Origin: Iphione sp. A-MEVVRFRX5 | Lineage: Eukaryota | Direction: 5' to 3' | Length of the DNA: 64,000 nt | Assembly (NCBI GenBank): GCA_976226885.1 | Contig: OZ320315.1 | Coordinates: 97,402,001 to 97,466,000, forward strand | Shown: in pieces, positions 9,463 to 64,000 of the stretch | How the letters are laid out: every line of letters begins with the position of its first letter | How positions within the stretch are numbered: the stretch's first letter is position 1 | The notes under the pieces: generated by a model | Told to the model about the DNA's origin: nothing | Seen by the model: only the letters and a program-made list of their open reading frames with translations | Database searches by the model: none | Made by a program: the position numbers and the translations under genes

Positions 9463-9481
9463 AGCATAGGCAAACAGCGTC

Positions 9482-14479: not shown

Positions 14480-15150
14480 CCCGCAACTGTGATTCTCCCA
14501 GAGAGTTACTATCCGACTTTCTGTGAAACAGGCAAAAATCGGTAAGTGATCACTAAATCTTTCACTGACGTTTAGGAGTGATCTTTGCAACTACCTCTTT
14601 CATGCGTTGACGATTTAATGATCTGCCAAAAGCCATAACTGTTCGCCCAATAGTCACAATCTCTCTGCGGACCTGTCCAGTCAAGCCAATTCACATTAAA
14701 ATCACCAATCACGCTCACATCCTTCTGCCTCATTAACAGATTGTCCAGTATATCTAGAAATTCCATGACCCTACATGTGGTGATTGATAAGCAACCCCCC
14801 TGGTTTGCAGGTCACGGTATTCCCCCCAGTGGTCCAGAGTAACAATATTCAGTGATCACCTCAGTGAGATACTCCTGTCTGACATAGAGGGCAACACCTC
14901 CACCAGTCTTTTTTGCAGTCTTCGTCAAGTCCCTATTAAGTCAAAGATGTTCATAGCCCGGTAGTTCCATTATCCCTAAAGGCAATCCCTCCTTTAACCA
15001 TGTCTCAGTTACACCAAAGATATCAAAACTCTCGTGCCCTAACATTATTTCTAATTCGCCTAGCTTCCCTAACAAGCTACGACAGTTCCAGCGAGCTTTA
15101 ATCCAAAGGAAAAGAAAAGAAAACGATGCCATGATGTTATCCTTAAGCAC
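14480..15150 (-). pseudogene. LINE APE endonuclease relic
   Basis: WNCRSL, FGVTETWLK, LPGY, GGGVALYV, VIGDFNVNW, SDHLPI. Confidence 0.85.
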
Positions 15151-16849: not shown

Positions 16850-17005
16850 CCCAAGTCCAGATGCCAAGTGTTTGTGCTCTGGCAGCAGATAAGGTTTCAC
16901 ATCCTCTCTGCGGTATTTGTTGACATGTGAATTAACCAAAGCAATGATAAAGGCAAGATCAGTGAGCATTTTCCCTAGATCATTTACCCAATAGCCTTGA
17001 TCTGA
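16850..17005 (-). pseudogene. DIRS1 gag fragment
   Basis: DLAFIIALVNSHVNKYRREDVKPYLLPEHKHL matches the DIRS gag RRE.xKP.L motif. Confidence 0.5.
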
Positions 17006-17096
17006 ATGTTCATGTAATAATAATAATAATAATAATTTTATTGTCTCAAAAGTTCTTCTCATAGAAGATATTCATGATGGGACATTATACATTCAT

Positions 17097-19870: not shown

Positions 19871-19880
19871 ATCACGATAT

Positions 19881-20481
19881 TTAGTAAGCAAAACAATAGT
19901 TGTCCACCAAAAACCTTTCTAGCTCCTCTAGCCATTGGTCAGTTACGTATCCTGGTACATCTCCGAAGGGGCTTACTAGATCATCGTTGAACACAATATA
20001 GTTCCCAATTATTTGATTAATTGGAGAGCAGGTGTCTGGCGTGCTAAAGCCGTTGTTGTTGTTCATGGTCTCTACCAGTCCATTGAGAAGAGCAATATGA
20101 TAATTTAAATCTCTTTGGGTACGAGTGAAGGGGCCATCTATAGCCATCCCATGGATTGGTAGGAAAACTACGGTGTGACTGTAGGGTTTGAAGAGGCTAT
20201 GGACGATCGAGGTCATATCCTCCCATAGATCGTACTGTAGCGGAAGAGAGGTGGAATATCTAACTACAGGTTGGTCCCCTTCATATGCTATAAGATTATT
20301 AAAGCCCAAATAAATAAACGATACATCAACACCCAGTTGTGGTATATTGTTGAGATTATCCAAAACCGGCAGCAGGCATCACTATGCTTGTCCACTCAAA
20401 GCGGTCTCCAAATACATATTCGGCCAATCGCCCCAGCTCGTGTCCTTGGACATCGGTGATGAAATTCACTCTAGGTCCCAT
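19881..20481 (-). pseudogene. Copy 2 SGNH/GDSL-fold ORF, one frameshift near 20365
   Basis: MGPRVNFITDVQG...VSFIYLGFNN...ERFLVDNYCFAY. ATG at 20481. Confidence 0.7.
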
Positions 20482-20563
20482 CGTGTGACAGTCCTGATGA
20501 AAAGGTAGATAACATTGCATTCAGATGTTGTATAGTCGACTTCGTTGGGATGATATGTCACCA

Positions 20564-22129
20564 TTAATGTTTTGTGATAATTCCACCCCTGATCATGGTA
20601 AGCGCAAGCCCTACATAGTTACGACCAGTGTATGTGCCTGTGACCAGGCTATTGTCTTTCAAGCTACATGCACTACCATATGTACAATGTCGTGATACTT
20701 CAATCAGGGTCTTACCTCTCGTGAGCAGGAGTTGATCTCTTATGTCGTCTTGTTGGTGATTCCTAGCAGTTAGTATTGCACTGAGTGTATCAAGCTCTAT
20801 GCCTTCCCACTCTGTAGTGGTTTTCACTGCGTCTCCGATGCGTCTGGCCTCATATGGGTGGGGAGTGAGTACGATTTTTTCTGCTGCCAGAGTGTCATTG
20901 CACGTTTGAGCCTTGGTATACTGCAGCGCATGCTCTGCCGATTTAAAAATTTCTCCATTGTACTCAAGGGGGAGGGGGTATAGGGGGGACAGCTTACAGC
21001 TGGCACCCCGAAACGCAAGCAAGTCGTCTGTGTCAACTATATTCGCTGATTCCCATGTTAATCCCTCGGGTAGTTGGTCGAGTGTATTGGGGTTGTATGT
21101 AACACCGTCCACTCGTAGCGCCAACCCCGAGACTCCTGATTTTAATCCCTTTTGTCTTGCAAGCCCCGCTATGTCTTGTAGTTTCAAGTAGGTAGCTGAA
21201 GCGTTTTTCGGTATATCCTCTCTTATATATACAAACGAATATTCCTCAATATTTTTTAGCTTATGTCATTTTGAATAAATAGCGTTTCGTGCTTTTGTGG
21301 ATGTGAACTGAATTTTCACCAGTCTTTCTCTCCCTGGTAGGGCTTTTCCAAGTCTTTTTATGCCTAAGACGTTTACCTCAGTGATAGCGCTATCTATTGA
21401 GTTAATGATGTCATACACTGCCTCATTAAGATTATATTTATCACTGTCAGGTAATCCCTGTAGAATAAGGTTGTCTTTCCTGCTTAAAATTTCTTTCTGT
21501 AGTTCGTCATAGTCAGGGTGCTCGGATCTAACTGTGTTCTCAGTAGTAATATGGATAGTATTTTCGGTGAGTGGTGGTGCCGTGTTAGCTGATTCATGTT
21601 CCTCATCCATTGTACTATCTTGGTTAACAGGAGAATAGTGTTTGCCCATACTCATTTCAATTTCTGAGATACGGTCCATGGCTGTATTGAGTAGGTTCAT
21701 TAAGTCCCTATTATCCTCATGCAATTTTTTAATGATGGAGTTTTGAGCATTTACCAAATTCTCAGTATTCTCCTGTATTTTCTTCATTTGAATAAGGATA
21801 TATCTTTCATTGTCGAGCACAGTCCCTAATATCTCATCTTGTATACAGATGTGTGGTTTACCTTCACGGGGTTGACCTTCCGTGCGGGGTCCCTTAGGCA
21901 CAGGCCGGCGTCTCATGCTGCTCAGGTCCGTGTCAGCGGGCGATTTTACAGTAGGGCGCACGTAGTTCTCACTTGCCATATCACCGTTACGCTGTGGTAC
22001 ATCCAACGATACCGATTTGGCCCCCAATTTAACTGTTTCCTTTGGTTTTTCACTGTTTCCTTGCTTGTAACGTCTTGTTCTTCTTCTTTCCTCCAACTTT
22101 GTCGTTTTGCAGGTTTTGGTTAATGCCAT
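20564..22129 (-). pseudogene. Copy 2 ORF1 (521 codons, single in-frame TGA at 21266-21268): coil + RRM/CTD + NADAR
   Basis: The two ORF-track pieces are in the same frame (AIYSK*HKLKNIEEYSFVYIREDIP). NADAR about 21030-20567: SAEHALQYTKA, PYEARRIG, EWE, LLLTRGKTLIE, GRNYVGLALTMIR. Confidence 0.9.
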
Positions 22130-26205: not shown

Positions 26206-26959
26206 CTGTCAAGTAGGGTAACTTTGAACTGTGATTGTAACATGTTGAATCGATTTTAACTTTTCTTGTATGAAACACTACTCGCTTATATAGTGTGGTA
26301 ATGCACACGTGGTCGTTCTGGTTGATTTCACTCATGATGACTCGCCCTATTCATGCCGTCACCTTTAACTGAACACATGCAGTACCTGCTGTATTAATAT
26401 ATCTTGGCAATTGTATTATGGTATCGTTAGCTATGTCACCAACTGAATGTTGAATACTATAGTACATATCTAATGTTACCTCCCGAACACTGAAAGCCAC
26501 AATTGACTACACATACAACAACAAACATGTGGTCCTTTCTGAATTCCCACACAAAAACGGTGACCACACTGTTCCAACTGAACTTCTTTCGATTCTGGTT
26601 TTGAAAATTCCTTATTTGAACCTTTGTGAAGTTTACTATTCTGTCGTTTTGTGTCTACTTGTACTTCAGATATGCTATTTTTTGTCCTTGACTTTGTAGT
26701 AGGCTTTGAAACCTAAACAAAAACCTACTGGTGACCTTACATATGGTTCTTTTTTCATGGGGTATTACCATACCATACTCCTTGGTACAAGTCTCCCACC
26801 ACTGTGCACGTTTTCGGTAACAAGTCTATAGTTACCTCCAATACAATCACCGGGCTACTCATTTTGGGGGGAGTCTTTCTCGGAGTCCTTCTTGGGGACG
26901 CTCTTTGCCCTTTCTTGCCTTTGGGCACAGTATTTGTTGACGAAGCATGCCTTGCAAAA

Positions 26960-29900
26960 AAAAGAGCCATGTGACAGCACACAGTGCCTTAAGTTGACAT
27001 CTGACAAGCGGGATCTGTAAGGTGCGTTCCCGAAACTGGATCGTCTTGGTCACTCTCACCTGGAGCAACACACCGTAGCTGGTGAAAACGACATCCCCCC
27101 TGGTCAGCGGGTGGAACTCCGAGTCTTGGGACTTGAATATGTTTGACTTGCGGAGCAGGCTGCGAAAACACACGCAGACAGCGACCCAGGTGAGCCACTG
27201 GGTCCGATCAGACAGGTCAACATGGTGAAACATAGCTAGCAAATGGGAAGGGAACAGCGGGTACTTGAAACACACCTGGCAGCCTAGTTCCCTTTTTAGG
27301 CCACGCAGAAGAAACTGGATGCTGACCTCCTCCCTGAAGGTGTGGGGTAGACCCGCCTTCTTGTGCATCCAGATGACTCCAGACAGGTAGTTGTCAATGG
27401 TAGCGAAGGACAGGTCACTCGACAGGAAGGCGAGAAACCGCGCCACTGTCAAGGTAGAAGCAGGCAGTGCTGTGAGGTGGTGGGCACTGCAAAAATCGAA
27501 GAAACGTTTCCACTGCGAAGCCCTCGTCCTGTTAGTCTACATGGCAAAGGCACAGGACATGAGGAATCTGCGTCTGTTGTCGATCGCACCCAGGTCTGCA
27601 ACACAGGACATAAGGGTCAACACGTGACAACCCAGATGTGGAGCTGCGTGACAGACAGTCAGCAATAATGTTGGCTTGGGTAGGGATATACCTAGCAGTG
27701 ATTCGGAAATTAAACATCGCCGACCACCAGAAAACCTGATGGAGTATGGTCATGCACACCGGTTCATGAGACGTCCCTTTGTTGATAGCATGCTTCAGTC
27801 CCATGTTGTCCGTGTATAAGACTACATGCCTGGCACGCCATCTCGCAGCCCACCTGGCTGTCGCCATTAGCACCGCTGCCGCTTCTCTAGGAAAAATAGA
27901 GCTGCTACATGACTGTGGGAGGCCCACATCCAAGTGGTGGTGATGTCCCGCCGGGGGCTCCGCCACAAATGCCTCAGTGTGGTTGTCGACAAAGTTACCC
28001 CGTAACCAGTCGCCACACCAGGTTGCCCGTAACCTTCCAAGCTGGCATCCGTCTTGACACAATCGACAAGTGAATCGTGGTGAACGATGATCTTAGCTGA
28101 TCTGTTGAACACTGCGGTGAATTGCGACCACCATTCATGTCCATATGGAATTCACGACCAAGGCGTACCCTGCCAGCCTTGCTTCTCTGGGCGATGCCCA
28201 GTGTATCGATGATTCTGTGACAGAACGTTCTGCCCCCTTGAACCACTGACGCACAGTGGTTGAGCAAGCCCACGACACGTTGTAGCTGGCGAGTAGATGC
28301 CCTCTGTCGACCTGTGAAGAACTGCAGGTCCTTATGCAGGGCTTCTAGTTTGTGCGCAGGAAGATGTAATTGCATGTTGACCGTGTCCACCTTAATGCCA
28401 AGGAAAGTGCACACTTGCAATGGGGAAGTCAATTTCCCCCAGCTGATGTAGAAGCCCAAGTCTCTCAGCAGACCTATGGCAATCTGTTGATGGTCGACAC
28501 ATTCCTCCCTAGTGGGGGCCGCTATGAAGAAATCATCCAGATAGTTCACACACGAGACCCCTCTACGTGCCAGACGCGTTTAATGAAGCAACTGATATGG
28601 TGAAAGAGACAGGGAGCTGCCCTGGTGCCAAAACATACACAATTGTCCCTCAGGTAATAGTCGGTCCCCCCGAACTGCCACTTTAGACCTTGATACGACC
28701 TTTCTGTAGGGTGAACATTAACTGACCTGTAAGCAGATTTGATATCGATACAGCATGCGTAGTAGCCAGGGCCGATGACATCCGCCACCTGGTCAATCCT
28801 CGCGAAGGAGAATGTTTCTGTGGTGGCGTTCATGTGGCTGTTGATGGATATCCCTTTGGGCCTGCTACAGTCTGTGATGGGGCGAACACCCCCCCCCTTC
28901 TTTGGGACGGCTCCCAACGTGTGTATCTGCTTTGGTTTGTACGTCAGGACCGTGAGCTTGTCTTCCTCGATTTCCGACTGCAACAGGCGCGACAGGAATT
29001 CTCCATCGTCGTTGCTCCGACACGACTTGTAGTTTTCCACTTCATACTCTTCGATCATTGTGTGAGGATCAATCATGCGAAAACCGTAGGCTACCCCATC
29101 TAAAAGGTAATGCCCGTCTGGATCTTGACCCTCCTGAATTTCTCTGTGCCAGGCTCGGAGGCGTAGCTGGCTTCGTACCCCCCCCGATGGAGTTGGTGCT
29201 GCCTGCGCCCCAGGCTGACCGGAGGTTAGGATCGCCATAAATCAACATAATGTCCGGAGATGACACCACACTAGAAAAACCTCCTGATTTGACAATCCTG
29301 GCACCACCAAGCCTGTTTAGCTGGCCCGTGACTCCTCCTCCTTCTTCTTGGATGGACATTCTGAAACCTTATGTGATTTTCTGCAAGACGAACACACGTG
29401 CAGTCTGCGGCAGTTGGTGAAGGTGCATTCCCTCTTGTTAAACTGCCAGCACACGTCTTGGGGGAAACTCTCCCACTCCTTGCCCCGGCGCCTCTCCCTG
29501 TTCGACCTTGGAAACACTGGATCACCGGATAGGTAATAGGCAACACTGTCGGTGTCCGCTACGACCCAATCCGCCAATTCGCCCGTGAGCACCTTGGTTG
29601 TCACTGCATGCTCATACCTCACCAGGTTCTCTGCGGTGTAGCCCCTCTTGGACCCTTCAAACATAACAAACCTAAGATGATTCAGGTAACCCGCCATAGG
29701 AAGACAACATTTCATAATATAGGCCAGAACGCTTGACATGCCGTAAAACAGCTCACCGAGTTGAAGTCGCTCATGGGGAACGTCTCTTGGTACATGGACT
29801 TTGGGATGGAATCTGCTTGCGGACTTCTGCTTCCCATCGGAGTGAGCCTCTATATCCACAGCATTCTTGTCCTCGTTGAATGGTGATTCCAAGATCCCTG

Positions 29901-30420
29901 CCTCAGGGAACCTGAAGCCCTGGCTTGTTGTCGAACTATGGCGTGGGCCGCCAGATCGCCCGTTGTGCTTGGCGGGAAAGGTCGATGCGTCCGGCTCGAT
30001 GCTGTCGCGGTTCCCCCCGTTGTTCCTGTTCCCCGCATGTATGCCCCGGTAAGTAATACGCAATTCTTCCAATTTCTTCCTAAGCCTGGCCTCCTCCAAC
30101 TCTTGTACCACTGCGATCCGGGCTTCCTGCTCCTCTACCTGCTTTTAAAGCCATGACAGGTATTCCAGCGTGCCCTGTGCTGGTTCCTTGCTCTGGTTAA
30201 TGTCCGGGTCTTGACCAAAAATACTCTTGTTCGTCGCCAGATTCTCCCCCAGGTCTCCACCCATAAGACCAGTGGTAGAGTTCAGCAAGGCATAAATTTG
30301 CCTGCACTCTGACCTGACCGCGGGACGATGACAATCGCCACACGCACTGCAGTTCATGCTCATGAGGATAGCAAAGCAAAAATTCGAATGACTAATGGCA
30401 GTTGAGGGTGCCAAGCATAC
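26960..30420 (-). mobile_element. Ngaro-type tyrosine-recombinase retrotransposon (gag, RT, RNase H, YR), frameshifted, 3' truncated
   Basis: gag CWQFNKREC..C...H.CSSC...H...EC. RT IDIKSAYR, FG...AP, YLDD. RNase H TDASLEG, YTDNM, NIIADCLSR. YR LLRKSN, TKTIQF, lacking the HxxR end. Confidence 0.9.
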
Positions 30421-37144: not shown

Positions 37145-37440
37145 TAGGGTTTGCAACTGTTGTGGTGAGTTTCCTTTCCTCTTTTCGTATCGTTGAGTCC
37201 AAAAATTTTATTTGTTCTGTGCTTCGTTCAATGAAAAATTTCGCATTACTTCTCGCCTGTTGTAGGGTTCTCGAGAAGGAGTTGTTTCTTTTCCCCATGA
37301 CGCCATATCATGAAAATGTAATCTATGAGCCTGAGCCATAGATCTGGTTGTGGGTCATTGTTATGCACAAATTCTTCCTCGAAGTCATTCATTTATATAT
37401 TCGCATATGTGGGGGCCACTCTAGTGCCCATCACGGTGCC
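37145..37440 (-). pseudogene. Penelope-like element RT fragment
   Basis: Manual translation: MGTRVAPTYANI*MNDFEEEFV, LWLRLIDYIFMIWRHGE, FFIERSTEQIKFLDSTI. Confidence 0.8.
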
Positions 37441-38994
37441 CCCCCCCCCCCACTTCTAAGATACATGTAGTATTTCTCGTCAACATTACTTCTAGCAGTT
37501 TTATGATTGTTGAGTTAATTGGGGTGGTTTTACCGCTTCTGTATTAGTCTATGAAGCTACGAGTGGCTTTCAGACCCTCATCATTTGGGATAAAAGGATT
37601 TATGGGAAGTGACAAGTTTAGCGGGGGAACTGGTGCCCGACGGCTCCCGAAGTGCTTCTCAGGTGCCGGGGGCGGGCGTTTGGGTGCTGGCTGTGGTTTC
37701 AGATTCAGATTCAGATATGTTTATTGAGATCTCCGCACATGTTTACAGAGCTTTCCACAGCAATAGGAAATGAATACAAGGATAAATTTAATAACAACGG
37801 TACAAGAAGATAGACATCTTGATTTGGTAATACTTACAATATCAATTAATTGATCAAACACAGTAATGGATGTGAAATAGTACAAACAAAGAAGCAGTAA
37901 TGAAATAGAGAATAATACAGTATGGATAAATACCAAAGGGCGACACTCTGAATCTCTGAATTAATCACAGTAAGCTAAATATACCTACTCCCTCCTCAAA
38001 TTCCACATACATTTCAACAAATTCAAAAATGACATGACAATCGGTAAAGTTTTAAATATGTAGGGAGCCGTTATGCGTAAAAAATGCATATTAACCATCA
38101 TCTAACTCCATATGGCAGTATGATTTTAAACACAATACCAATTGCATAGTAGCATACGGGCAGACTTGATGTCACAATAATGAATAGATTAAGTAAGAAT
38201 TAAAGAGCTTTGATTGATTGACAGTATTAATGTAGAATAAGCATGTCCCTACAGTAAGCAACAACAGATCCGATTGGAGACAATCTTAAAGTGAGATATC
38301 ATGATATCAAAAGTATTCACAGTTAAGCCCAATATGCCACGTCATTCATCACTAATGTAGAACGTTTACCAGCTTCATAAGTCACATAGCAACAGGTTGA
38401 AAAAAAGCTTGACACGTAAGGAAATGTAGTAAGTAGCAAAAGACACACATACCACCACCAAATTCAATGCAGGACAACAAGTCAGACACAAGATAGTTTG
38501 AGGAATAAATATACTAGTACAGTTAGTGCTATCATTACAAATAGTGTCTCACGTTTTCATTGATGTTCGAAGAAAACTACTAGTGTACACACACAAAAAA
38601 AAAAAGTACAGCAAGTGGAAGATAATTCAATATTTAGTGATGTTCACAACGAGCCAAGAGCCATACTTCATCTCTCATATACCTGGATCTAGCCCGGAAT
38701 ATCCATAAATGTAGCATCTCCAAATCAATATGACATTCTGGGGGCTGTGCATGATTTCTCAATCTCACAGAAAAAAACTTATCACAACCTGAATTAAAAA
38801 ATAAGAAGACGATAATTGAAAAGTAATATAGTGAGATAGAGACACTCTTCCACTTGTGCAGAGTTTGATTACATATGGTCATGTAACAATTGTTCCTTTG
38901 GTTCTTTAATTTACATGGTTCATAACGTATCCAGTTTAAACTGTTCAACTTTTTGGCCATCATGGATAGCAACAGCACAATATCCATCACAGAT

Positions 38995-41751
38995 TTAAAT
39001 ACAGAATTTGTCAGGAACCCTTTTGCCAAGCTTTACACTGGGAGGTAATGCGTTCCATTTGACAGTCCCCTTGTAGCGGAGCGACTTGGCATACATAGCA
39101 CTGGTTGGTTTGCTGACATCTCCACACAAAGTCTGTCCTAGTCTCGTCATCGTCTTGATCTTAGAGGGTATAAGACCAAGACACATCAACTTATGCATAC
39201 ATTGCATACCTCGCATAGCAATCAAATCCTCTATCCTGGGGACATCAAATCGGTCATGTAGTACACGGGCAGGTAGGTAGTTTCTTACCTGGAGGCAGAC
39301 CCTAGCACATTTATGTATAAATGATTGTAGTCGGATTCTCTGTGACACACTAATAGCATATAGCATAATAGCATGAAAATTGACATGGGATAGCACTAAG
39401 GATACAAACAATTGTTTTCTAGCTGAGACCGGTAGCAGATGCTTGGTTCTGCCTATATGTAGGGCTGCCAACCACATCTTCTTTTTTAGGGCTTTAATTG
39501 TTAAGGTACACTTCAACTGACTGTCTACAAAGTAGCCTAGGAGAGTACAATTTGTCACCATTTTTAATTGTGCACCACCCAGAACTAGATCCAAGTCAAC
39601 ACCTGCTGCTCTTCCCACTTGTAGGTAGGAACACTTGGCAGCACTCAAGATAAGTCCAGTGTTTTTACTCCATTCAGAAACAGCTTGAATTACCTGTGAG
39701 CAACGATCACGAAGGAGCAGCAGATCCCTAGCAGCAATAGTTATAGACAGGTCGTCAGCATAAATGGTCGGTTTACAGAAGTTCGGTAAGTGTTGGACAA
39801 CATCATTAATTACAAGGATAAATGCATTCGGCCCAATGATTGAGCCCTGAGGCACGCCATGCTTAACAGGTTTAACAGTCGATATTTCACCCCTACACTT
39901 TACTCTCTGATGCCTGTCATCTAAATAGCTACTAAAAAACCTCCTAGTGCGAGGACCAACTCCTAGTTTTGCTAATTCAGATAATATTTTGCCATGCGGG
40001 ATAGTGTCAAAGGCCTTTTTAAAATCAAACATTAATATTGAGGTATATAGTCCTCGGTTGCAATACTCTTGAGCTTCCCCTATGATTGTCATGATAGCAG
40101 TTTCAGTTGATCTCAGACCCCTGAAACCATGCTGCGCTATATGTAGCAGTCCCTGTGCCTCAATCCAAGCCATCATCTTTCCCATCACCCATGCTTCTAA
40201 GATCTTCCCAGGAAGTGGGAGTATGGTGATTGGGCGGTAGTTTGCAATGTCTTCTCTGTTCCCCTTTTTGAACACCGGTGTTACTATCCCTTGTTTCCAT
40301 GACCCAGGGAAGGAGCCAGCTAACACACACCTGACGAACACCAAGGTTAGGAAGGCATGGAATCTGATTAATACTGGTTTTAAGATTTTTGTCGGGACAC
40401 CTTCAATTCCAGAAGGTTTAGTTAGTTTCTGTTTGTTAACAAGAGCAACAACCTCCCTTGGTTCTGGAATAGGAAGCTCAAACTGTTGCCCTGTCACACT
40501 GTCAACACATTCATACTCCTTTCTCGACCCGTCAACCAGCTTGTCCACCTCACTAATGAAGAAGTCATTAAAACAGTCCGCTAATCCCTTATTCCCACTA
40601 ATAATGTTCACAGCACTCGGTAGGGTGTTCTTATTACCCGCTCTTCCCGTCACCTCATTTAGCACTGCCCATGTCTTCCTGGAGTCACCTTGTGCCTCGC
40701 TAAGCCTACTATGCCACCATGCCCTCCTTTCTGATTTTAAGGCCTTCTTCACTTTCCTATCAAGATGCTTATAAATTCGCAAGTCATCCAATGAGCCAAA
40801 CATTCTCCATTTTTTGAAAAAGTATTCCCTATCTTTACGAAGGCTATTTAAACCAGCACTTGGTTCAAAATTGCCCTTATCTAGCCTCACCTTCCTACAT
40901 TTTTCTGGACAAGACGATGCCAGCTCCTCTTTTAGTCTGACTTCAAACTCATCCCATCTCAGTGTAGGGTCTCCTTCCATTTTGCCTACCCCATACTCCT
41001 CTAAGGTTTCACACAAATCTGGCACATCTACCTTCCCCCATTCTCTGTATGACTGGGTTTCTACACTACGGAAGCCCCCACCCTTTTTAATGGTGACAGA
41101 TACAGGGAGATGATCACTAAGGTGAAGAGAGCCCACCTCCGACCCCCTATGGTCATCGAAGTTCACCCAGAGGTGATCAAGGCATCTGTCCGACTCTATC
41201 ATTGTGGACTCTGTTACTAACTGTCTTAGTCCCCTCCCATGCAGGTAATTTGCCACCCCCAATCCTGCTTTGCATGTATTGGAGTAATGGTAGTTGAAAT
41301 CCCCACCCACTACCCTGTCACTCCTCCTCAAGTTAAAGAAATCTTTCATGGCATTGTCAATAGCATGCACAGAATCCGCAGCCCTGTCCCCTGGCGGCCT
41401 GTACACACAGAGTAGTTCGATTGGGCGCCTCATTCCTGCCTTTAGTTTTATCCCTAGAATTTCTGTTAAAGAGTCTGCAACTGCTAGCACTTTACTGTCT
41501 AACAAGTTGTAATGTGATCTGTAATAGATTATCAGTCCCCCACCCTTCTTCTTACAGGTAGGGGGCCTGTCCGCCCTGATTGCACTATACCCTGGAATAT
41601 CTACACTGCTGTCCAAGTTGTTACCCGATAGCCAGCTTTCCGTTATTCCACATATATCAACACCCTCCTTATACAGATATTCAGCCAAACAATTTTTCTT
41701 CTTTGCTAAGCTTCTTATGTTATAGAACATTACTTTGATGCCCGGGGCCAT
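38995..41751 (-). CDS. Intact 918-aa APE endonuclease-reverse transcriptase
   Basis: YNIRS, ITESWL, GGDFN, CLDH and SDH (APE catalytic set). NYRPI, QHGFR, DFKKAFD, GVPQGS and YADD (RT). Confidence 0.96.
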   Translation of the reverse strand: MAPGIKVMFYNIRSLAKKKNCLAEYLYKEGVDICGITESWLSGNNLDSSVDIPGYSAIRADRPPTCKKKGGGLIIYYRSHYNLLDSKVLAVADSLTEILGIKLKAGMRRPIELLCVYRPPGDRAADSVHAIDNAMKDFFNLRRSDRVVGGDFNYHYSNTCKAGLGVANYLHGRGLRQLVTESTMIESDRCLDHLWVNFDDHRGSEVGSLHLSDHLPVSVTIKKGGGFRSVETQSYREWGKVDVPDLCETLEEYGVGKMEGDPTLRWDEFEVRLKEELASSCPEKCRKVRLDKGNFEPSAGLNSLRKDREYFFKKWRMFGSLDDLRIYKHLDRKVKKALKSERRAWWHSRLSEAQGDSRKTWAVLNEVTGRAGNKNTLPSAVNIISGNKGLADCFNDFFISEVDKLVDGSRKEYECVDSVTGQQFELPIPEPREVVALVNKQKLTKPSGIEGVPTKILKPVLIRFHAFLTLVFVRCVLAGSFPGSWKQGIVTPVFKKGNREDIANYRPITILPLPGKILEAWVMGKMMAWIEAQGLLHIAQHGFRGLRSTETAIMTIIGEAQEYCNRGLYTSILMFDFKKAFDTIPHGKILSELAKLGVGPRTRRFFSSYLDDRHQRVKCRGEISTVKPVKHGVPQGSIIGPNAFILVINDVVQHLPNFCKPTIYADDLSITIAARDLLLLRDRCSQVIQAVSEWSKNTGLILSAAKCSYLQVGRAAGVDLDLVLGGAQLKMVTNCTLLGYFVDSQLKCTLTIKALKKKMWLAALHIGRTKHLLPVSARKQLFVSLVLSHVNFHAIMLYAISVSQRIRLQSFIHKCARVCLQVRNYLPARVLHDRFDVPRIEDLIAMRGMQCMHKLMCLGLIPSKIKTMTRLGQTLCGDVSKPTSAMYAKSLRYKGTVKWNALPPSVKLGKRVPDKFCI

Positions 41752-42675
41752 TCTGGTGGAGAAGTAGGGACAACAAGACTTTTGGCAGTAAATGCAGAAT
41801 CAAGGTATCACAGGTCGTAGCTGCCACTCACTGATTACCATCCAATATCCTATCTGCACATAGTACAGGACTTTGGTTCAATACTAGCATTGTACGATGC
41901 TACAGTATCTCCCTAGTTAGAAGGAGGAAAAAGGGGGGGTAGAACTGAAGCTAGTACAAAAATAGACAGACTAGTATAATGTGCCGATTTCTAATTTATA
42001 CATGATTCATACGGGAAAATACAGGTGTTAGAGGTACTAAAGCAGTATCACAAGTATTTAGGGACTATGGAAAGTTACTTATGGCCAACTGCACCTCAGA
42101 AAATGTTACATGAGATGCAGCATCAGGGGTATTAAAATAAAGTACAATATTAGCGATTGCTATGTAGACACATATGAATATGCAAATCACAAAATCTCGG
42201 ATGAAACTTTCTGGATAAATGTCAATAGTTCGTAATCACAGATTGTTTGCTGATTGTCGTAGCTACCATACACCAATAATAGTTGAGTGCAAAAAACACT
42301 TCTTGGCAAAAGCACCTAGAGTAATACTTTCACTATATCTGGATTAATTGGTAAATACAACTAACACCTTTTATATTTGCCTTTCTCAGGGTAACAAGCT
42401 CCTTAATGATCAATGTACAGCCTATTACCTGAATAGATAGTGATCAGAAAGAACTTGGGTATACAGGTACAATAGTAAATGGAATCACAGTTCAGATTCA
42501 GTCTTTTCCAACGTTAGAGGTGAGTAATCAGTAGGTTCGAAATAAACAAGATACAGATGGTATTGGGTGCTCTCCCGGATGGGTATCTGTCAGGAAACAA
42601 TTTTCTAGATTATGAGTCTACAAAAAAACACACTCTGTGTGCCAGGCCTGTGTATATGATCATTAGGCCAAAATC

Positions 42676-43392
42676 CTACCAGTGAACTTGATGCAGGGCA
42701 CCATTGTTGCTGACGTGGAAGTGTCCATACATCCTAATATACTCATGGAGGAATTGTCTTATGGTGTAACTCCAATCGTTCAACGTCCCCATCTTTGGGG
42801 TGAAGCCATCTCCCTCAAGACGATCAAAGTAGTTGTAGATTTCACCGGCAGATGGGATGCTAACTGGCTGTGCCAAAGTACATGGAAACATGCCGATAGC
42901 ACTAGAAGACGCTTCACATCTCAAGTTGAGAATGGTAACCGCAGCATCCAACTTGAACTGTTCATCCTCATCCTCCATGTCAGGCTCCATTCGTCCTAGA
43001 TCCACACTTGCAGCTGGACAGCATACCACATGGGGGCCTCCATTCGGGGCCTTGCCACACAGGTCATAGATCCTCTGCATGTATTTCTCCAGGTAATCAC
43101 TATACGTAGCAGGGGAACCAGTGCTCACGGACCACTGGCCCGTTTCGTTGATGACCCAGTCATCCATGCCAGAGCTGATGAGAATCAGATGGAATTGACT
43201 AACATCAGTATACAAAAGCCACCTGCATATTTTTCTGTATGATGCCCTCCTCATCGATACCAAGTGGATTCGGGTCGGCGGTAACAAGTGCAGCACATCC
43301 TCTAACAACTTGAAAGCAGGTGCGCTCCTCCTGTCACTTAGAACTAGGATACGAGTCTTGTGGCTTGCCGAACCCGCTGGCGGATGTTCCAT
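42676..43392 (-). CDS. Stand-alone SGNH/GDSL-fold protein, 238 aa from Met 43392
   Basis: RILVLSDRRS (block I-like), LILISSGMDD (block III-like), EGDGFTP..LNDWSYTIRQFL (block V-like). Confidence 0.7.
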   Translation of the reverse strand: MEHPPAGSASHKTRILVLSDRRSAPAFKLLEDVLHLLPPTRIHLVSMRRASYRKICRWLLYTDVSQFHLILISSGMDDWVINETGQWSVSTGSPATYSDYLEKYMQRIYDLCGKAPNGGPHVVCCPAASVDLGRMEPDMEDEDEQFKLDAAVTILNLRCEASSSAIGMFPCTLAQPVSIPSAGEIYNYFDRLEGDGFTPKMGTLNDWSYTIRQFLHEYIRMYGHFHVSNNGALHQVHW

Positions 43393-43491
43393 CTTTCGCA
43401 CTAGCAAGGGAGAGAAAAACACATATCATAGCCTACACATCTGAATGCGATTGCCTGAGATCCGGATGCATATGAAGATACAGGCTCTAAA

Positions 43492-44664
43492 TTATGCTTG
43501 CATCAGTTCTGATCGAATTTTCATTAGCACTTCACCCACAAGGTTTTTGCCTTCTCCCCTCAGGAGCTCATTGGGATTGCTAAACACGACTTTGTTGTTG
43601 CCAGTCCCTAGATCTAGGTCACGGTCGACGTAAGCGATCAATTTGTTTCCTGTCGTCATCAAGAAGGTTTTAACAGTCGGATTGGCATTAATTACGGCTC
43701 TGTAGACTTTATCAACTATTACCTTTGAATTTGAGTCCCATTCTTGATTCTTCTTGACAGATATATTTGCTTTTCTCACCGCAGATAAGCTAGTTGCGTT
43801 TCGAACGTTGCGCTCCAGTTTTAGATCTGGTACTGCACGAGAGCGGAGGTGATGGATAGCAACTTCCGGCAAGTCGTAGTGTTTACCTTCTATCTCCACC
43901 GGCCCTAGAGAATTAGGCGCAAATAGGTTGTTGTCAGCATCAAACAGGAACTCCTTGTCATTTTCCCAGGTGCTAGCTGTATTGTCACATAGGAATTCGG
44001 GGAGGTAAGTCTTGTCAAGAGGGGAGAAACGTTCACCGTCGAGTAACAGGTCGACTCCCCTGACAGTCGCCTTGCTGCCGTGTTCCCTTGCCTTTCGTGC
44101 TAGACGTTGCTGCGTAGTATTATAGTCAACAGCAGACATGGGGAGATCCTCTTTTATGTAGATTTGACGTGTCGATTCGTTCTTAATTAGCTTAAAGCGG
44201 GCTTTCAAGATGGTGTTGCGTGTTTCAATCGAGTCAAGCAGCACGCCAACCCTTAGCCTGTCTTTATTTACATTGTGACAGTGACAGTCAATAACTTCAC
44301 TCTCTCTGATGTTCGCAGTGTTCTTTAACAATTTGCGAACATAGCACTTCAGATTCTGCTTCTCAGCCACAGGAATTCCTTCTATTGTTATTTTCCTGCA
44401 GCGGTCATTGACTTCTAATCTTGTCAGTTCCAGCTTAGCCTTAGCCTGTTTTACCAACCCAAGGTGTACTGGATCACAACAGGCAGCAGACACAGATATC
44501 ATGGAAGAACCAGCAGGAACAGAGCTGAGAGAGCATTCTACTACCCCAGCACTGTCTTGCCGAGCCCTTTTTGATGATCTACTCCCAGAGGAGGATCTTT
44601 TGGCTCTTTTTTGCTGCCTAGGCTGCTCAGATGACATGTCCATAACTGAAGAAGCCAAATCCAT
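43492..44664 (-). CDS. ORF1p: basic N-terminus + L1-type RRM/CTD + divergent NADAR-fold domain
   Basis: RCRKITIEGIP...ETRNTILKARFKL..IYIKEDLP (RRM/CTD). aa ~250-400 has VEIEGKHY, QEWDS, FLMTTGNKLI, GEGKNLVGEVLMKIRSEL (NADAR). Confidence 0.85.
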   Translation of the reverse strand: MDLASSVMDMSSEQPRQQKRAKRSSSGSRSSKRARQDSAGVVECSLSSVPAGSSMISVSAACCDPVHLGLVKQAKAKLELTRLEVNDRCRKITIEGIPVAEKQNLKCYVRKLLKNTANIRESEVIDCHCHNVNKDRLRVGVLLDSIETRNTILKARFKLIKNESTRQIYIKEDLPMSAVDYNTTQQRLARKAREHGSKATVRGVDLLLDGERFSPLDKTYLPEFLCDNTASTWENDKEFLFDADNNLFAPNSLGPVEIEGKHYDLPEVAIHHLRSRAVPDLKLERNVRNATSLSAVRKANISVKKNQEWDSNSKVIVDKVYRAVINANPTVKTFLMTTGNKLIAYVDRDLDLGTGNNKVVFSNPNELLRGEGKNLVGEVLMKIRSELMQA

Positions 44665-45129
44665 GATAACAATAAACAACAAATGACACAAAATCAACAA
44701 AGCAAAGCTGAAAATACTCCTTTTGATGATCCTGGTAAGAAAATAGTATCACAATTTACCTTTACCCTATCTAGCTTCTGCAGGAAGTCTGGTATGTCTT
44801 GTATGTAAGATTTAGTTCCCTTGATGATAGGTTTCAAGAGTGATGGCTTGGGGGATTCAGGAAGTAGTTGCCTGGCTATCTCCCACGGGATTTCGTCTTC
44901 TTGTTGGAGGTGTGTAATTAGTGTCTTTATACTCTATACCAGGGTCAGTTTCCAGTGTTTGTCACTGAGTTGTCTCACCCCTTCCATTCTGTTTTCTTCT
45001 GCACCCCATACAAGGTGCCCAACGACAACCAACGGCAAAAAAAGAAAAAGGCTGTAGGTGGCTAAGGTGGCTACAGTGGGTGGTACTCCACACTACAGAC
45101 TAGTTGGGGGTGGTCAGTGCAAGATGCAT

Positions 45130-45860
45130 CAGACTAGGGCTGTATCGTAATGAACCAGCAAAATGGCTACTGCATGGTCTGTCCATTTGTGCACATCTTT
45201 TTGAGCCCCAACAGACAATGGTCCTGTTTGCAATGGGTAGCAGTCCTAGGACGACCTGTCACTTGAGTGCAGCAAGTCCTCTATGCGCAACAATGGAGGT
45301 GACCTTTCAATGCCAATTTTTTCTGACATGGTTCAGGAGCTCAAAAACAAGCCAGTCACAAGTGCCAATCTCTTGCACCTATTTAGGTGGACTTGAAGGT
45401 TGCAGATGTTTGACTCCGTCGTCACATAGTATAGTACTGCCGCATGCATACAGGATATGGTGGAGCACAAGAGCCTTGAATAAGACCAACCGTGCATTGA
45501 TGGGCAGCCTGTTCTTTACACAACCACATCTTCTATTAGACCTCTTTAATTCTGACTTTAAACTTTAGGTGGGCATCCACTGTATAACCAAGGAGATGCT
45601 GGGCCATGTCTCTTTCCATTTTTTTTCTTGCCACCTAAAGTGATATCTAATGGGATGCCAGCTGCCTTCACAGGTGGAATAAAGCGGCACTTCTTGGTAC
45701 TCACCACCAGCCCAGCTCAGTCGCACAACTTATGGACTGCATCAATCATGTTTTGAATCACACCTCGTAACTTCAGTAGGTCCATCGAGTCAGCAACCAC
45801 TGTCCCACAGGATGTCAAAGGGAGCATATTAACTATATCCTTTATCACCAAGTTATCACT
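45130..45860 (-). pseudogene. LINE RT C-terminal relic related to copy 3
   Basis: DLLKLR..IDAV...GLVVSTKKC...LDITLGG..LLGYTVDAHLK..KMW aligns to the C-terminus of 38995-41751. Confidence 0.7.
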
Positions 45861-61591: not shown

Positions 61592-64000
61592 GTATTGTAT
61601 TGTATTGTATTCTTTATTTCGGAATCTCTGTTTACAGACAAAGCTTTTCACCCGAAAGCCAAGTTCGGGCACTTACTTAGAGGATGTGATTTATAATAAT
61701 TAAGGTAGTAATGAGAACATTCAAGACTGAGATAGCCATTAACCGGTCATGAGTAAATACTTAATAACCTGATCAGTGACGTTAGCGCTATGCAATCAAC
61801 TATACAAGCTGTACAAAAGTGAATCGACATCTGAGGCATGTAATAAAGATGAGAACAATCAGTCAAAATATTCTATCCTTTGTCACAAGTGAATAAGAGA
61901 ACAAAATAGACATCGTCTTGGCTTATTACAAATATTGCACAATGTACTCTTTCTTAGTATAGCGATCACAAAAGTACAAAAGTCACTTAAAAGTACGTTT
62001 CGGCTAATTGCAGATACAAAACAAATTGACACTGTTGAAGTCATTATATATATTGCCTGACGTACTCACCTAGAATAGCAATCACAGTTGGCATTTTAAA
62101 TATTTGGTTCGGCTAATTACAAGTATTGCACCAATACTCTCTTAATAAAGTGATCACAGTTGGCAGTTAAGATACTGGTGTTACACTCGTAATTTGGTCA
62201 AATAGCACTAGGTGTATCCAGTATGGCTGAGGTGTCGGATGGTAACAGCCATCAAATCACAGGCACAATCGTGTAATAGGATATCCCAATATACTCTCTT
62301 GCATGGGGTATCACAGATTGGTTGTCTACACACACACAATCACATTCCATTCATTCATAGCCCCATTCACACTACATACTCAATTACACAAACAGTTATA
62401 CATACTCATCTCATACCATTTTTCCATCTACGCCAGTCGCACTCTTTTAGCACCTTACCCAACTTTACCTGGTTTGGAAGTTCACTCCAACTTGCTACCC
62501 CTCTGTATCTCAATGATCTAGCAAATCTCATCGAGCGGGGCCTGCACACTTTCCCTCGCGTTCTGCTACCCATTCGTGTTTTGGTACCCAATCCCTTCGG
62601 TAGGAGCTCCAACCGCATCAGCTTGTGCACTACCGCAGTCCCCCTATATTCGATCATGTCGAAGACCCTGTCCATACCTAGCCTCCGTTGTAGATTTGTA
62701 GCACTCTGACCATCCTTAGTGATCAGTGCAGCTCTCACACAACGGTTTAGAGTGATCTGTAGCTTCACTTTGTTCGAGTAGCTAACCCCGAACAACAGCC
62801 CAGCTGTGTAAACCAGATGAGTTAGCACTAGTGCTCTGAATAGCATTAGCCTCACATGAAGGGGTACCCAATGTTTTATTCTGGCAATCTGCGTAGACGC
62901 TCTCCACATTTTGGCCGACGTGTTGCGGATCGCACCACCGTAGTCGAGTTTTGAATCAATGTCAAACCCCAGGAGTTTTACATTGGTTGATGCCGCTAGT
63001 TTAGTTTCGCCTATTTTCAAATCAAGGTCGAGACCAGTGGCAGTACCAAGGGGCATGTGTACGCATTTAGTAGAGCTTAGTAGGAGACCGTTGTCGCTGC
63101 ACCAATTTACAACGGAGTCAAGAGCTCGTGCCGCTTGGCTTCTCAATCGCATAAGGTCCCGCGCATGCACCAGGACAGTTAGATCATCTGCATAAAGCAC
63201 CGCTGATGCTTGGTTGGGGAGCACAGCTGTAACTGAGTCCACTACAAGGTTAAAACCTAACGGGCCAAACACCGACCCTTGCGGTACCCCATGGCAGACC
63301 ACTCTTTTGCTCGACTCGCTGTCGCCACACCTGACAAACTGACTCCTATCAGTGAGGTAGCTACTGATCATTGCCAGTAAGTTTTTACCACCCCCCACCA
63401 TCCGCAGCCGATAGAGTACATTGTCCCTGCTCACTAAGTCAAAGGCTTTTTTTAGATCGAATAAAAGCCAACATACGTACTCTTTTTGGTTAATCAGCTC
63501 TTGTGTGTCACATACGAGCTTTGCGGCCGCTGTTTCTGTACTGAACCCCTCCCTGAAGCCGTGTTGCATCATGCTGAGACTACTTTGCCGGGTCAAGTTG
63601 TTATTGATTTCCTGGCAGAACCACTTCTCACACAACTTACCAGGGAGGGGCAGTATCGACACAGGACGGTAGTTTGTCAAGTTGTTGGGGTCCCCTCCTT
63701 TGTGAATTGGACAAACCCGTGCCGTTTTCCATGCTCTGGGATATCGTCCTGTAGCATAAATCTGCTCAAATGTCCATGAAAGGAATGCTGCATGTCTAAG
63801 AAGAATTGGCTTGAGGATCCTAGTTGGGATCCCACTGAGCCCGGATGATTTTTCTATGGACACCCTCTGGACAATTTTCCTGACTTCATCAGGAGTCGGT
63901 GGGCGGATATCAAAGGTTTCGCCACGTGCGGTTGTTGATATATGCACTGGAGGTGTCCATGGCTGGCTTAACCTATCAACTGAGTCTACAAAATGGTTGT
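61592..64000 (-). mobile_element. LINE related to copy 3 (open RT to window edge, about 0.8-kb 3' UTR, AATAAA + (AATAC)4 tail)
   Basis: RT ORF of 513+ aa with GVPQGS and YADD. C-terminus SLRYRG..W..LP..VKLGK as in copy 3. Tail at 61592-61611. Confidence 0.92.

What the first reader, a model, noticed from the sequence alone, without database searches (positions are those of the whole stretch)
37698..44700. Apparently intact, potentially active three-ORF element with a degenerate NADAR
All three ORFs are open and the APE/RT catalytic motifs are intact, unlike nearly everything else in the window. Its NADAR keeps the fold pattern and the terminal GKNLVG.VLM.IR motif but has lost the EH..Q..K residues (PEVAIHH), and the LIE position reads LIAYVD. 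Copies 1 and 2 keep EH/Q/K, so the family may contain both enzymatic and pseudo-enzymatic (binding or decoy) versions. This is the best template for experiments.
Basis: partly seen in the sequence, partly recalled or inferred. Interest (0 to 1): 0.82.

Follow-up and report, generated by a model that had tools for sequence, protein, structure and literature searches.

The report
Intact three-ORF LINE carrying a NADAR domain
This is a real, structurally intact jumping gene (a LINE retrotransposon) whose RNA-binding protein ends in a NADAR (ADP-ribose-processing) domain that has lost one key catalytic residue; this pairing has been noted only once in passing in the literature, and it hints that some animal retrotransposons deal with ADP-ribose marks on nucleic acids.

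Summary
The observation largely holds. On the minus strand, 44664-37698, lie three open frames:
- ORF1, 390 aa, with a Pfam NADAR hit above the curated cut-off.
- A 238-aa middle ORF with no detectable relatives.
- A 918-aa endonuclease/reverse-transcriptase ORF with intact motifs.

The element ends in AATAAA plus (TCTGAA)3.

Two older, broken LINEs in the window (24-28% identical) show the same order of NADAR ORF, small ORF and APE-RT. The three-ORF layout is therefore a trait of the group.

The claim of a degenerate NADAR is only partly right. In the family alignment the first catalytic Glu is kept (E267) and the Lys is Arg (R274). What is clearly lost is the last-strand Glu that defines YbiA-type NADARs (A344). 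Mutating that residue abolishes activity in published work.

"Potentially active" is doubtful:
- A 924-nt non-coding spacer with 10 ATGs separates the middle ORF from ORF3, against 8-19 nt in the sister copies.
- No target-site duplication was found.
- The 5' end is undefined.

NADAR domains in LINE ORF1 were already noted for oyster Tx1 elements in 2025. I rate this a new variant of a known kind, of moderate interest.

The parts
37698..37716 (-). 3' terminal simple repeat (TCTGAA)3, the end of the element
   Evidence: TRF. The sequence changes abruptly to GC-rich flank after it. All four LINEs of this group in the window end the same way, each with its own unit.
37717..38994 (-). Long (about 1.28 kb) T-rich 3' UTR with AATAAA at 37725-37720
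   Evidence: Stops in all frames, GC 0.34 and negative codon log-odds in all frames. Sequence read. No significant RNA structure at the 3' end (z = +1.1 to +1.4).
38998..41751 (-). ORF3, 918 aa: apurinic-type endonuclease (about 41730-41101) plus reverse transcriptase (Pfam RVT_1 40263-39619); stop at 38997-38995
   Evidence: No C-terminal CCHC knuckle. A at -3 and G at +4 around the ATG.
41752..42675 (-). 924-nt non-coding spacer between the middle ORF and ORF3; origin unexplained (insertion, internal-initiation region or intron)
   Evidence: 16-21 stops per frame, GC 0.38 and 10 ATGs. No repeats or target-site duplication around it. No similarity elsewhere in the window. No structure signal (z = -0.15). 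A donor-like site lies at 42679 and an acceptor-like site ends at 41753.
42679..43392 (-). Middle ORF, 238 aa, orphan; stop at 42678-42676
   Evidence: Coding-like. No Pfam, NCBIfam or PDB sequence hit. No word-search hit. The only hit in the 1.84-billion-protein search is a spurious repeat protein. The AF2 model is unusable, pLDDT 37.
43393..43491 (-). 99-nt spacer between ORF1 and the middle ORF, with 4 ATGs; a pyrimidine tract plus TAG ends at 43401
43495..44664 (-). ORF1, 390 aa from the first ATG: disordered N-terminus, long helices, an RRM-like alpha/beta unit (about 44472-44020) and a C-terminal NADAR domain
   Evidence: The weak top Foldseek matches are the L1 ORF1p trimer (E=0.04) and YbiA (E=0.1, prob 0.82).
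43504..43905 (-). NADAR domain (PF08719). Key codons: E267 at 43866-43864, R274 at 43845-43843, W309, A344 at 43635-43633, D349
   Evidence: Pfam. The family profile hits YbiA 2b3w at 5.6e-9 and P. nicotianae NADAR 8bau at 5.5e-4. Alignment A1. Positions.
44665..44760 (-). Short 5' UTR with an uncertain 5' boundary (somewhere in this stretch)
   Evidence: Upstream of about 44760 the frame reads as part of another reverse-transcriptase gene. No target-site duplication fixes the junction.

Best explanation
This is one structurally intact, probably recent insertion of an endonuclease-type non-LTR retrotransposon (LINE). It belongs to a group that occurs at least four times in this window.

The group's layout is tricistronic:
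1. ORF1: a coiled-coil and RRM-type RNA-binding protein whose C-terminal module is a YbiA-type NADAR domain.
2. A small second ORF of unknown fold. It may be a non-catalytic derivative of the SGNH esterase seen in CR1, L2 and RTEX ORF1 proteins.
3. An APE-RT ORF that copies the RNA into the genome by target-primed reverse transcription. Priming would be at an AAUAAA plus short-repeat 3' end.

Inferred function: NADAR enzymes remove ADP-ribose from guanine and cytosine bases in DNA and RNA. A NADAR riding on the LINE ribonucleoprotein would therefore protect or process the element's RNA or cDNA against host nucleic-acid ADP-ribosylation. That would parallel phage NADARs and viral macrodomains.

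In this lineage the active-site helix has diverged (only the Glu is kept, and Lys is Arg) and the last-strand catalytic Glu is Ala. Hydrolysis by the known mechanism is therefore probably lost. The domain would persist as a structural or ADP-ribose/nucleic-acid-binding module.

Shown: the ORFs, the domains, the residue states, the shared layout and the 3' end.
Inferred: the role of NADAR, loss of activity and recent mobility.
For: - ORFs and domains.
- NADAR: Pfam score above its cut-off. The family profile hits YbiA at 5.6e-9 and 8bau at 5.5e-4. Copy B's NADAR scores 64 bits.
- Residue mapping.
- Catalytic roles come from PMC11543638 and PMC12945103. There the equivalent Glu changed to Asp or Gln gives complete loss of activity.
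- Six of the eight residues of the active-site helix differ from copies A and B. That argues for long divergence rather than one fresh lesion.
- Same gene order in copies A and B, with a NADAR ORF, a small ORF (A versus B: 37% identity, E=2e-34) and APE-RT lying 8-44 nt apart.
- AATAAA plus a simple-repeat tail in all four related LINEs.
- The flanks on both sides read as successive parts of one older RT gene on the same strand, so the 7-kb block behaves as a single insertion.
- The middle ORF is coding-like.
- All three ATGs have A at -3 and G at +4.
- Literature context: NADAR in ORF1 of oyster Tx1 LINEs (PMC12477816), and CARP-1-type DNA ADP-ribosyltransferases concentrated in bivalves.
Against: - Only one copy is available, so there is no copy number, no dN/dS and no insertion polymorphism. 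All searches outside the window found nothing.
- No target-site duplication was found and the 5' end is undefined.
- The 924-nt spacer with 10 ATGs is unlike the sister copies and could block ORF3 translation.
- The AF2 models are poor (pLDDT 53 and 37). The NADAR fold is therefore supported by sequence profiles, not by a confident model, and Foldseek gave nothing at E<=0.001.
- HMMER's pairwise alignment gives a different reading of the first Glu.
- The effect of Lys to Arg is unknown.
- The flanking-RT reading rests on motifs that Pfam could not confirm on the short pieces.
- The counter-defence role is by analogy only.
Confidence: 0.55

Rival explanations
1. The NADAR of this element is still an active glycohydrolase. 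E267 and R274, with a nearby acidic residue (D347 or D349) replacing the missing last-strand Glu, would act on the same or a different ADP-ribosylated substrate.
For: - E267 is retained, there is a basic residue at the Lys position, and D349 (equivalent to D130) and W309 (equivalent to W89) are kept.
- NADAR subfamilies already use Asp or His in place of the Glu.
- The domain is maintained in an open frame with its C-terminal hallmark motif.
Against: - In SCO5665 even Glu to Asp at this position abolishes activity.
- In DarT1-associated NADARs the substitute Asp lies two residues before the Glu position, where this protein has Leu.
- W133 is Leu here.
Confidence: 0.2
2. This is a dead or crippled copy. 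The ORFs are open only because the insertion is young. The 924-nt spacer is a later insertion or rearrangement that uncouples ORF3. A344 may be a private lesion. The copy would then say little about a 'pseudo-enzyme lineage'.
For: - Sister copies have 8-19 nt where this copy has 924 nt.
- The spacer has stops in all frames and 10 ATGs.
- There is no target-site duplication.
- No second copy is available to show that the features are shared.
Against: - No repeat, target-site duplication, tail or similarity marks the spacer as a foreign element.
- Its composition matches the element's own 3' UTR.
- The nearest RT relative (62406-63998) also has a long 3' UTR of about 800 nt, so long non-coding segments may be a lineage trait.
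- The active-site helix differs at 6 of 8 positions, which is not a single hit.
Confidence: 0.25
3. The 924-nt spacer is an intron. Splicing from the donor-like GT at 42679 to the acceptor-like AG at 41753 would place the middle ORF's new stop (TGA) directly against the ORF3 ATG. That would restore the compact arrangement of the sister copies in the mRNA.
For: - The donor-like site CTG|GTAGGA overlaps the stop codon.
- A 16/20 pyrimidine tract plus CAG ends 1 nt before the ATG.
- Only 13 donor-like and 7 acceptor-like sites occur in 7,063 nt.
- The sister-copy gaps are 8-19 nt.
Against:
- A LINE copied from spliced RNA would lose the intron.
- A similar pyrimidine tract also precedes the middle-ORF ATG without a matching donor. 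That fits an internal-initiation signal as well.
Confidence: 0.12
4. The locus is a chance juxtaposition of two elements. ORF1 plus the middle ORF would come from one unit and the APE-RT ORF, with its 3' UTR, from another.
For: - The long non-coding gap between them.
- The middle ORF of this element is not demonstrably homologous to those of copies A and B.
Against: - The same order of NADAR ORF, small ORF and APE-RT appears in two independent, diverged copies.
- ORF3 starts with a complete endonuclease rather than a 5' truncation.
- The spacer contains no tail or junction signature.
- The flanks appear to belong to one interrupted RT gene.
Confidence: 0.06

Closest known systems
Tx1-classified LINE families of the Pacific oyster (Repbase) whose ORF1 proteins carry a YbiA-family NADAR domain (noted in PMC12477816)
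   Same: A non-LTR retrotransposon with a NADAR domain in ORF1. The paper suggests a role in processing the RNA intermediate.
   Different: - I could not compare sequences because no Repbase copy was available.
- ORF3 here is short (918 aa), lacks a C-terminal CCHC knuckle and ends in a simple-repeat tail. From my knowledge that fits CR1/L2-like elements as well as Tx1, so the clade is unresolved.
- The paper describes neither a separate middle ORF nor a missing catalytic Glu.
Ectocarpus Gypsy lineage with a NADAR domain at the N-terminus of Pol (PMC12477816)
   Same: A retroelement that independently carries a YbiA-family NADAR.
   Different: That is an LTR element with the domain fused to Pol, not to an RNA-binding ORF1. 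Its nearest relatives are bacterial.
L1-type (type II) ORF1p: coiled coil, RRM, C-terminal domain
   Same: Long helices followed by an RRM-like alpha/beta unit in the AF2 model. The top, weak Foldseek hits are the human L1 ORF1p trimer.
   Different: There is no Pfam Transposase_22 hit. The C-terminal part is a NADAR domain. The model is of low confidence.
SGNH esterase of CR1, L2, RTEX and Penelope ORF1 proteins (ZfL2-1; PMC3905857)
   Same: An accessory enzyme-like module sits just upstream of the APE-RT ORF. The middle ORFs show an alternating beta/alpha prediction and motif remnants (GxND-like and DGxxP..G-like). Copy B's middle ORF gives a faint Lipase_GDSL_2 hit at E=0.17.
   Different: - There is no significant sequence or structure match.
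- The Ser and His of the triad are absent in all three copies, as read.
- The module is a separate ORF rather than part of ORF1.
Stand-alone NADAR hydrolases: E. coli YbiA (2b3w), P. nicotianae NADAR (8bau), DarT1-associated and phage NADARs
   Same: The same domain family by profile. The first Glu, the Trp of the EW motif and the C-terminal G-x-N-x-[LV]-G motif are conserved.
   Different: The domain is fused to a LINE ORF1 protein. Lys is Arg, the last-strand Glu is Ala, and W133 is Leu.

Membership tests
APE-type non-LTR retrotransposon (LINE) | Reverse transcriptase with motifs A-E, including the catalytic Asp residues (YADD) | tested here: met
   RVT_1 at 6.3e-30. PDB hits to L1 ORF2p at 2e-9 and to R2 at 1e-6, with motifs A and B aligned. 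YADD is at residue 664.
APE-type non-LTR retrotransposon (LINE) | N-terminal apurinic-like endonuclease with catalytic N, E, D, N, D, H | tested here: met
   Exo_endo_phos_2 scores 26.9 bits (cut-off 27.4) and Exo_endo_phos 21.8 bits (cut-off 24.5). The motifs YNIRS, ITESW, GGDFN, LDHLW and SDH sit at the expected spacing. Assigning them to catalytic residues rests on my knowledge of the family, because no PDB alignment was obtained.
APE-type non-LTR retrotransposon (LINE) | Defined 3' end (poly-A or simple-repeat tail) with variable 5' ends and target-site duplications | tested here: inconclusive
   The tail is present: AATAAA plus (TCTGAA)3, shared in form by three related copies. No target-site duplication was found and the 5' end was not fixed.
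APE-type non-LTR retrotransposon (LINE) | Multiple dispersed copies in the genome | not testable with these tools
   There is no second copy at DNA level in the window, only diverged relatives. The source genome is not available, and the collections searched gave nothing.
NADAR superfamily (PF08719) | Significant match to the family profile over most of its length | tested here: met
   45.3 bits against a cut-off of 35.1, covering profile positions 28-162 of 163. The family profile hits YbiA at 5.6e-9 and 8bau at 5.5e-4.
NADAR superfamily (PF08719) | YbiA fold (helical core flanked by small sheets) | tested here: inconclusive
   The AF2 mean pLDDT is 53, and 42-75 per ten-residue block across the domain. 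Foldseek matches YbiA at E=0.1, prob 0.82, and finds nothing at E<=0.001.
NADAR superfamily (PF08719) | Conserved catalytic Glu and Lys of the first core helix (E43 and K50 in P. nicotianae; E88 and K95 in E. coli C7) | tested here: inconclusive
The family alignment gives E267 kept and R274 in place of Lys. HMMER's pairwise alignment places Ile at the Glu position.
YbiA family within NADAR | Glutamate in the last strand (E125 in P. nicotianae; 'LIE') | tested here: not met
   Ala344 in this element, Glu in copy B and Asp in copy A.
SGNH esterase ORF1 module of LINEs (type IV ORF1) | Profile match to GDSL/SGNH families and the Ser-Asp-His triad with Gly and Asn of the oxyanion hole | tested here: not met
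   There is no Pfam, NCBIfam or PDB match for this element's middle ORF. The only signal is E=0.17 for copy B. The nucleophile and His positions are not conserved. The fold could not be modelled.
Tx1 versus CR1/L2 clade assignment | Placement of the RT in a reference phylogeny; for L1/Tx1, a C-terminal CCHC motif in ORF2 | tested here: inconclusive
   No CCHC motif is present. No reference RT set was available, so no phylogeny was built. The PDB holds only L1 and R2 relatives.

The most novel reading that the evidence does not exclude
A group of animal LINEs fights, or exploits, ADP-ribosylation of nucleic acids. Their ORF1 proteins carry a NADAR module to strip host-applied ADP-ribose from LINE RNA or cDNA. 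One candidate source of that mark is the CARP-1-type DNA ADP-ribosyltransferases, which are concentrated in bivalves. This lineage would have converted the enzyme into a non-catalytic reader or decoy. In addition, the element may carry a genuine intron between its second and third ORFs, which would be highly unusual for a LINE.
Probability: 0.12. Interest if true: 0.8.

Novelty: new variant of a known kind. Interest (0 to 1): 0.5.

Why it matters
NADAR enzymes were shown only in 2023-2026 to erase ADP-ribose from guanine and cytosine in DNA and RNA. Their roles in animals are unknown. A LINE ribonucleoprotein that carries such a domain suggests that nucleic-acid ADP-ribosylation is a layer of host control over retrotransposition, matching what phage NADARs and viral macrodomains do for viruses.

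This window offers a natural comparison. Copy B has canonical catalytic residues, copy A has Asp at the last-strand position, and the intact element has Ala there. These could be tested biochemically.

The middle ORF has no detectable relatives, and the tricistronic layout adds to the known diversity of LINE accessory proteins. The case is limited by there being a single copy and no source genome.

Tried and rejected
**Searches that found nothing**
- Word-index protein searches of ORF1, the middle ORF and the NADAR domain alone: no hits.
- Exact look-up of all ORFs: absent.
- Full HMMER search of the middle ORF against 1.84 billion representatives: one hit, a 775-aa repetitive bacterial-type protein matched in five repeats, which I judged spurious.
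- Metagenome and viral contig scans with ORF1 and ORF3: nothing. The alignments were too divergent to use as queries.
- Literature search for DUF1768 with retrotransposons: nothing.

**Structure and profile attempts**
- AF2 of ORF1 with a 6-row alignment: pLDDT 53. Foldseek gave only weak matches.
- AF2 of the middle ORF: pLDDT 37, not searched further.
- PDB sequence and profile searches of the middle ORFs: nothing, or a chance hit. NCBIfam: nothing.
- hhalign of this element's middle ORF against those of copies A and B: E=0.21.
- PDB alignment for the endonuclease: none.

**Sequence features looked for and not found**
- Rfam scan of the element, for example for 5' ribozymes: no match.
- Repeats or a target-site duplication around the element and the spacer: none.
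- RNA structure at the 3' ends and in the spacer: not different from shuffles.
- Pfam confirmation of the flanking RT pieces: failed because the pieces are short. No paralogue with an empty site exists in the window.

**Considered and rejected**
- The middle ORF as a chance ORF.
- The window being vertebrate. NADARs are reported absent from vertebrates, so no human-sequence issue arises.

Full report
**What is there.** On the minus strand the region holds three open reading frames in series.
- ORF1 runs 44664-43495: 390 aa from the first ATG. The 402-aa version in the finding starts at a TTG.
- A middle ORF runs 43392-42679 (238 aa).
- ORF3 runs 41751-38998 (918 aa).
- They are separated by 99 nt and 924 nt.
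- A 1.28-kb 3' UTR follows. It ends in AATAAA (37725-37720) and (TCTGAA)3 (37716-37698), after which the sequence changes abruptly.

All three ATGs have A at -3 and G at +4. ORF3 is by far the longest ORF in the window.

**Domains.** Pfam finds the following:
- NADAR (PF08719) at the C-terminus of ORF1: E=1.4e-11, 45.3 bits against a cut-off of 35.1, covering profile positions 28-162 of 163.
- RVT_1 in ORF3 at 6e-30.
- Two endonuclease models in ORF3, just under their cut-offs.

The RT aligns with human L1 ORF2p and R2 proteins in the PDB, with motifs A (FDFKKAFD) and B (GVPQGS) in register. YADD is present. The endonuclease motifs are present at the expected spacing. I read them against my knowledge of the family, because no PDB alignment was obtained. 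There is no C-terminal CCHC knuckle.

The AF2 model of ORF1 is of low confidence (pLDDT 53). It shows long helices, an RRM-like alpha/beta unit and a helical C-terminal domain. The weak top Foldseek matches are the L1 ORF1p trimer (E=0.04) and YbiA (E=0.1, prob 0.82). Nothing is significant.

**Relatives in the window.** tblastn finds two older, broken elements on the same strand. Copy B lies at about 17097-22129 and copy A at about 6741-11100. Both are 24-28% identical to this element.
- Both have an ORF1 with an RRM-like part and a NADAR domain. Copy B's NADAR scores 64 bits in Pfam.
- Both then have a small ORF (A versus B: 37% identity, E=2e-34), followed by APE-RT.
- Their gaps are short: 8 and 19 nt before the APE ATG, and about 44 nt after ORF1 in copy B.
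- A fourth, very decayed NADAR relic lies at about 16506-16863.
- The nearest RT relative (39% identity) is cut by the window end at 63998.

All four elements end in AATAAA followed within a few bases by 3-7 copies of a 3-6-nt unit that differs in each element.

One caveat applies. This element's middle ORF is not demonstrably homologous to those of copies A and B (BLASTP E=0.2, hhalign E=0.21). The MAFFT alignment is colinear.

**The NADAR active site.** Published work defines the catalytic residues as follows.
- A Glu and a Lys seven residues apart on the first core helix: E43 and K50 in P. nicotianae, E88 and K95 in E. coli C7.
- An acidic residue in the last strand: E125 in YbiA-type proteins, Asp in DarT1-associated NADARs and His in phage NADARs (PMC11543638 and PMC11125620).
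- In SCO5665, changing that Glu to Asp or Gln abolishes activity (PMC12945103).

The residue states in this window are:

| Position | This element | Copies A and B | Source |
|---|---|---|---|
| First-helix Glu | E267 kept | Glu | |
| His after the Glu | Val | His | |
| Gln | His | Gln | |
| First-helix Lys | R274 | Lys | |
| Last-strand Glu | A344 | Glu in B, Asp in A | |
| W89 equivalent | W309 kept | not assessed | |
| D130 equivalent | D349 kept | not assessed | |
| W133 equivalent | Leu | not assessed | |

The first four rows come from the ungapped family alignment, P-E-V-A-I-H-H-L-R against A-E-H-A-L-Q-x-T-K. HMMER's pairwise alignment to YbiA inserts a 3-residue gap and loses the Glu. 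The ungapped reading is more parsimonious, and it fits the modelled helix start at P266.

The His and Gln are not essential. The active P. nicotianae enzyme has Gln and Met at those positions.

Six of the eight helix residues differ from the sister copies. That points to long divergence rather than one recent hit, but a single copy cannot show whether A344 is fixed.

**The middle ORF.** It is coding-like.
- Its 238 codons exceed the maximum of 197 seen in 300 simulated sequences.
- Its codon log-odds is +0.18 in frame against -0.27 and -0.42 out of frame.

It has no match anywhere:
- Pfam, NCBIfam and PDB sequence or profile searches.
- The word search.
- The full search of 1.84 billion representatives, where the single hit is a repeat artefact.

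AF2 failed, with pLDDT 37. Three things suggest a catalytically dead SGNH-esterase derivative, like the esterase of CR1, L2 and RTEX ORF1 proteins (PMC3905857):
- motif remnants;
- an alternating beta/alpha prediction;
- a faint Lipase_GDSL_2 hit for copy B at E=0.17.

This is a lead, not a result.

**The spacer and activity.** The 924 nt between the middle ORF and ORF3 have 16-21 stops per frame, GC 0.38 and 10 ATGs. They show no repeat, target-site duplication or similarity that would mark an inserted element. They have no excess RNA structure.

Sister copies have 8-19 nt at this point. This is the main reason to doubt the "potentially active" label.

One post-hoc observation stands out.
- A donor-like site overlaps the middle ORF's stop codon.
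- A pyrimidine tract plus CAG ends 1 nt before the ORF3 ATG.
- Such sites are rare in the element: 13 donor-like and 7 acceptor-like in 7,063 nt.
- Removing the stretch would leave TGA directly followed by ATG.
- A similar tract precedes the middle-ORF ATG.

This could mean an intron or an internal-initiation signal. Only RNA data can tell.

**Boundaries and context.** No target-site duplication was found. The flanks read as successive parts of one older reverse-transcriptase gene on the same strand.
- Upstream lies a KPII.G... segment.
- Downstream lie IPNDEGL and then G.VMG..VAP.YAN and LIDYIF segments.

The 7-kb block therefore behaves as one insertion. Pfam could not confirm the short, decayed pieces. 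The 5' end lies somewhere between 44665 and about 44760. Every LINE or RT match in the window is on the minus strand.

**Comparison with what is known.** The only paper in the searchable library that links NADAR to transposable elements reports two things: a NADAR domain in an Ectocarpus Gypsy lineage, and divergent NADAR domains in ORF1 of several Repbase Tx1 LINE families from the Pacific oyster (PMC12477816). The association itself is therefore not new.

I could not obtain those sequences or build an RT phylogeny, so the clade (Tx1 or CR1/L2-like) is open.

NADARs are reported absent from vertebrates, so the window is from a non-vertebrate. The organism was not identified.

By analogy with phage NADARs and viral macrodomains, the most likely role is handling ADP-ribose on the element's RNA or cDNA. 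CARP-1-type DNA ADP-ribosyltransferases are concentrated in bivalves. An oyster nidovirus also encodes NADAR and macro domains. Both facts make a host-parasite conflict over this modification plausible, but this is inference.

**Verdict.** The element is real and intact. It has a genuine NADAR domain that lacks the YbiA-type catalytic Glu. It is a new variant of a barely described kind. Interest is moderate, limited by the single copy, the unexplained spacer and the lack of a confident structure.

The breaks in copies A and B are described only.

Noticed in passing
window 1-64000: Every LINE or RT match to ORF3 in the window (ten segments) is on the minus strand, and most long ORFs are too. 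This is a one-strand pile-up of retroelements of several kinds, reminiscent of a unistrand piRNA-cluster-like region.
   Followed up: no
window 44697-44933 and 37249-37699 (minus strand): The two flanks of the element read as consecutive parts of one older, decayed reverse-transcriptase gene: a '..KPIIKG..DFLQKL' segment upstream, and '..IPNDEGL..', 'G.VMGTRVAPTYAN' and 'LIDYIFMIW' segments downstream. The LINE therefore appears nested in another retroelement in the same orientation. Pfam could not confirm the short pieces.
   Followed up: partly
window 45115-45851 (minus strand): A 5'-truncated fragment of another LINE RT (C-terminal third, 27-56% identity over three pieces) lies just upstream of the element.
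   Followed up: no
window 16506-16863 (minus strand): A fourth, heavily decayed NADAR remnant with the C-terminal G..N.LG..LM motif lies upstream of an endonuclease fragment at 14578-15090.
   Followed up: partly
window 37698-37725; 17015-17050; 6616-6650; 61592-61625: All four related LINEs end in AATAAA followed within 1-5 nt by a short simple repeat, with a different unit in each: (TCTGAA)3, (TTA)7, (ATCA)5 and (AATAC)4.
   Followed up: yes
window 43378-43401 and 41753-41776 (minus strand): Pyrimidine-rich tracts ending in YAG lie 8 nt and 1 nt upstream of the ATGs of the middle ORF and ORF3. Only 7 such sites occur in the 7-kb element. They could be splice acceptors or internal-initiation signals.
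   Followed up: partly
window 12455-13789 (minus strand): An open 444-aa ORF has a sub-threshold Phage_integrase (tyrosine recombinase) match at E=1.6e-5, which suggests a DIRS- or Crypton-like element.
   Followed up: no
window 26859-30111 (minus strand): A string of ORFs gives weak RVT_1 and RNase H-like (RVT_3) matches. This is another, unrelated retroelement.
   Followed up: no
window 10654-10671 and 11050-11148: ORF1 of copy A is interrupted by a (TAT)6 microsatellite. A 52-bp unit is tandemly duplicated near its 5' part.
   Followed up: no
window 61612-62405 (minus strand): The closest RT relative of ORF3 (39% identity, cut by the window end at 63998) also has a long 3' UTR of about 800 nt. 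Long non-coding segments may therefore be typical of this sub-lineage.
   Followed up: partly
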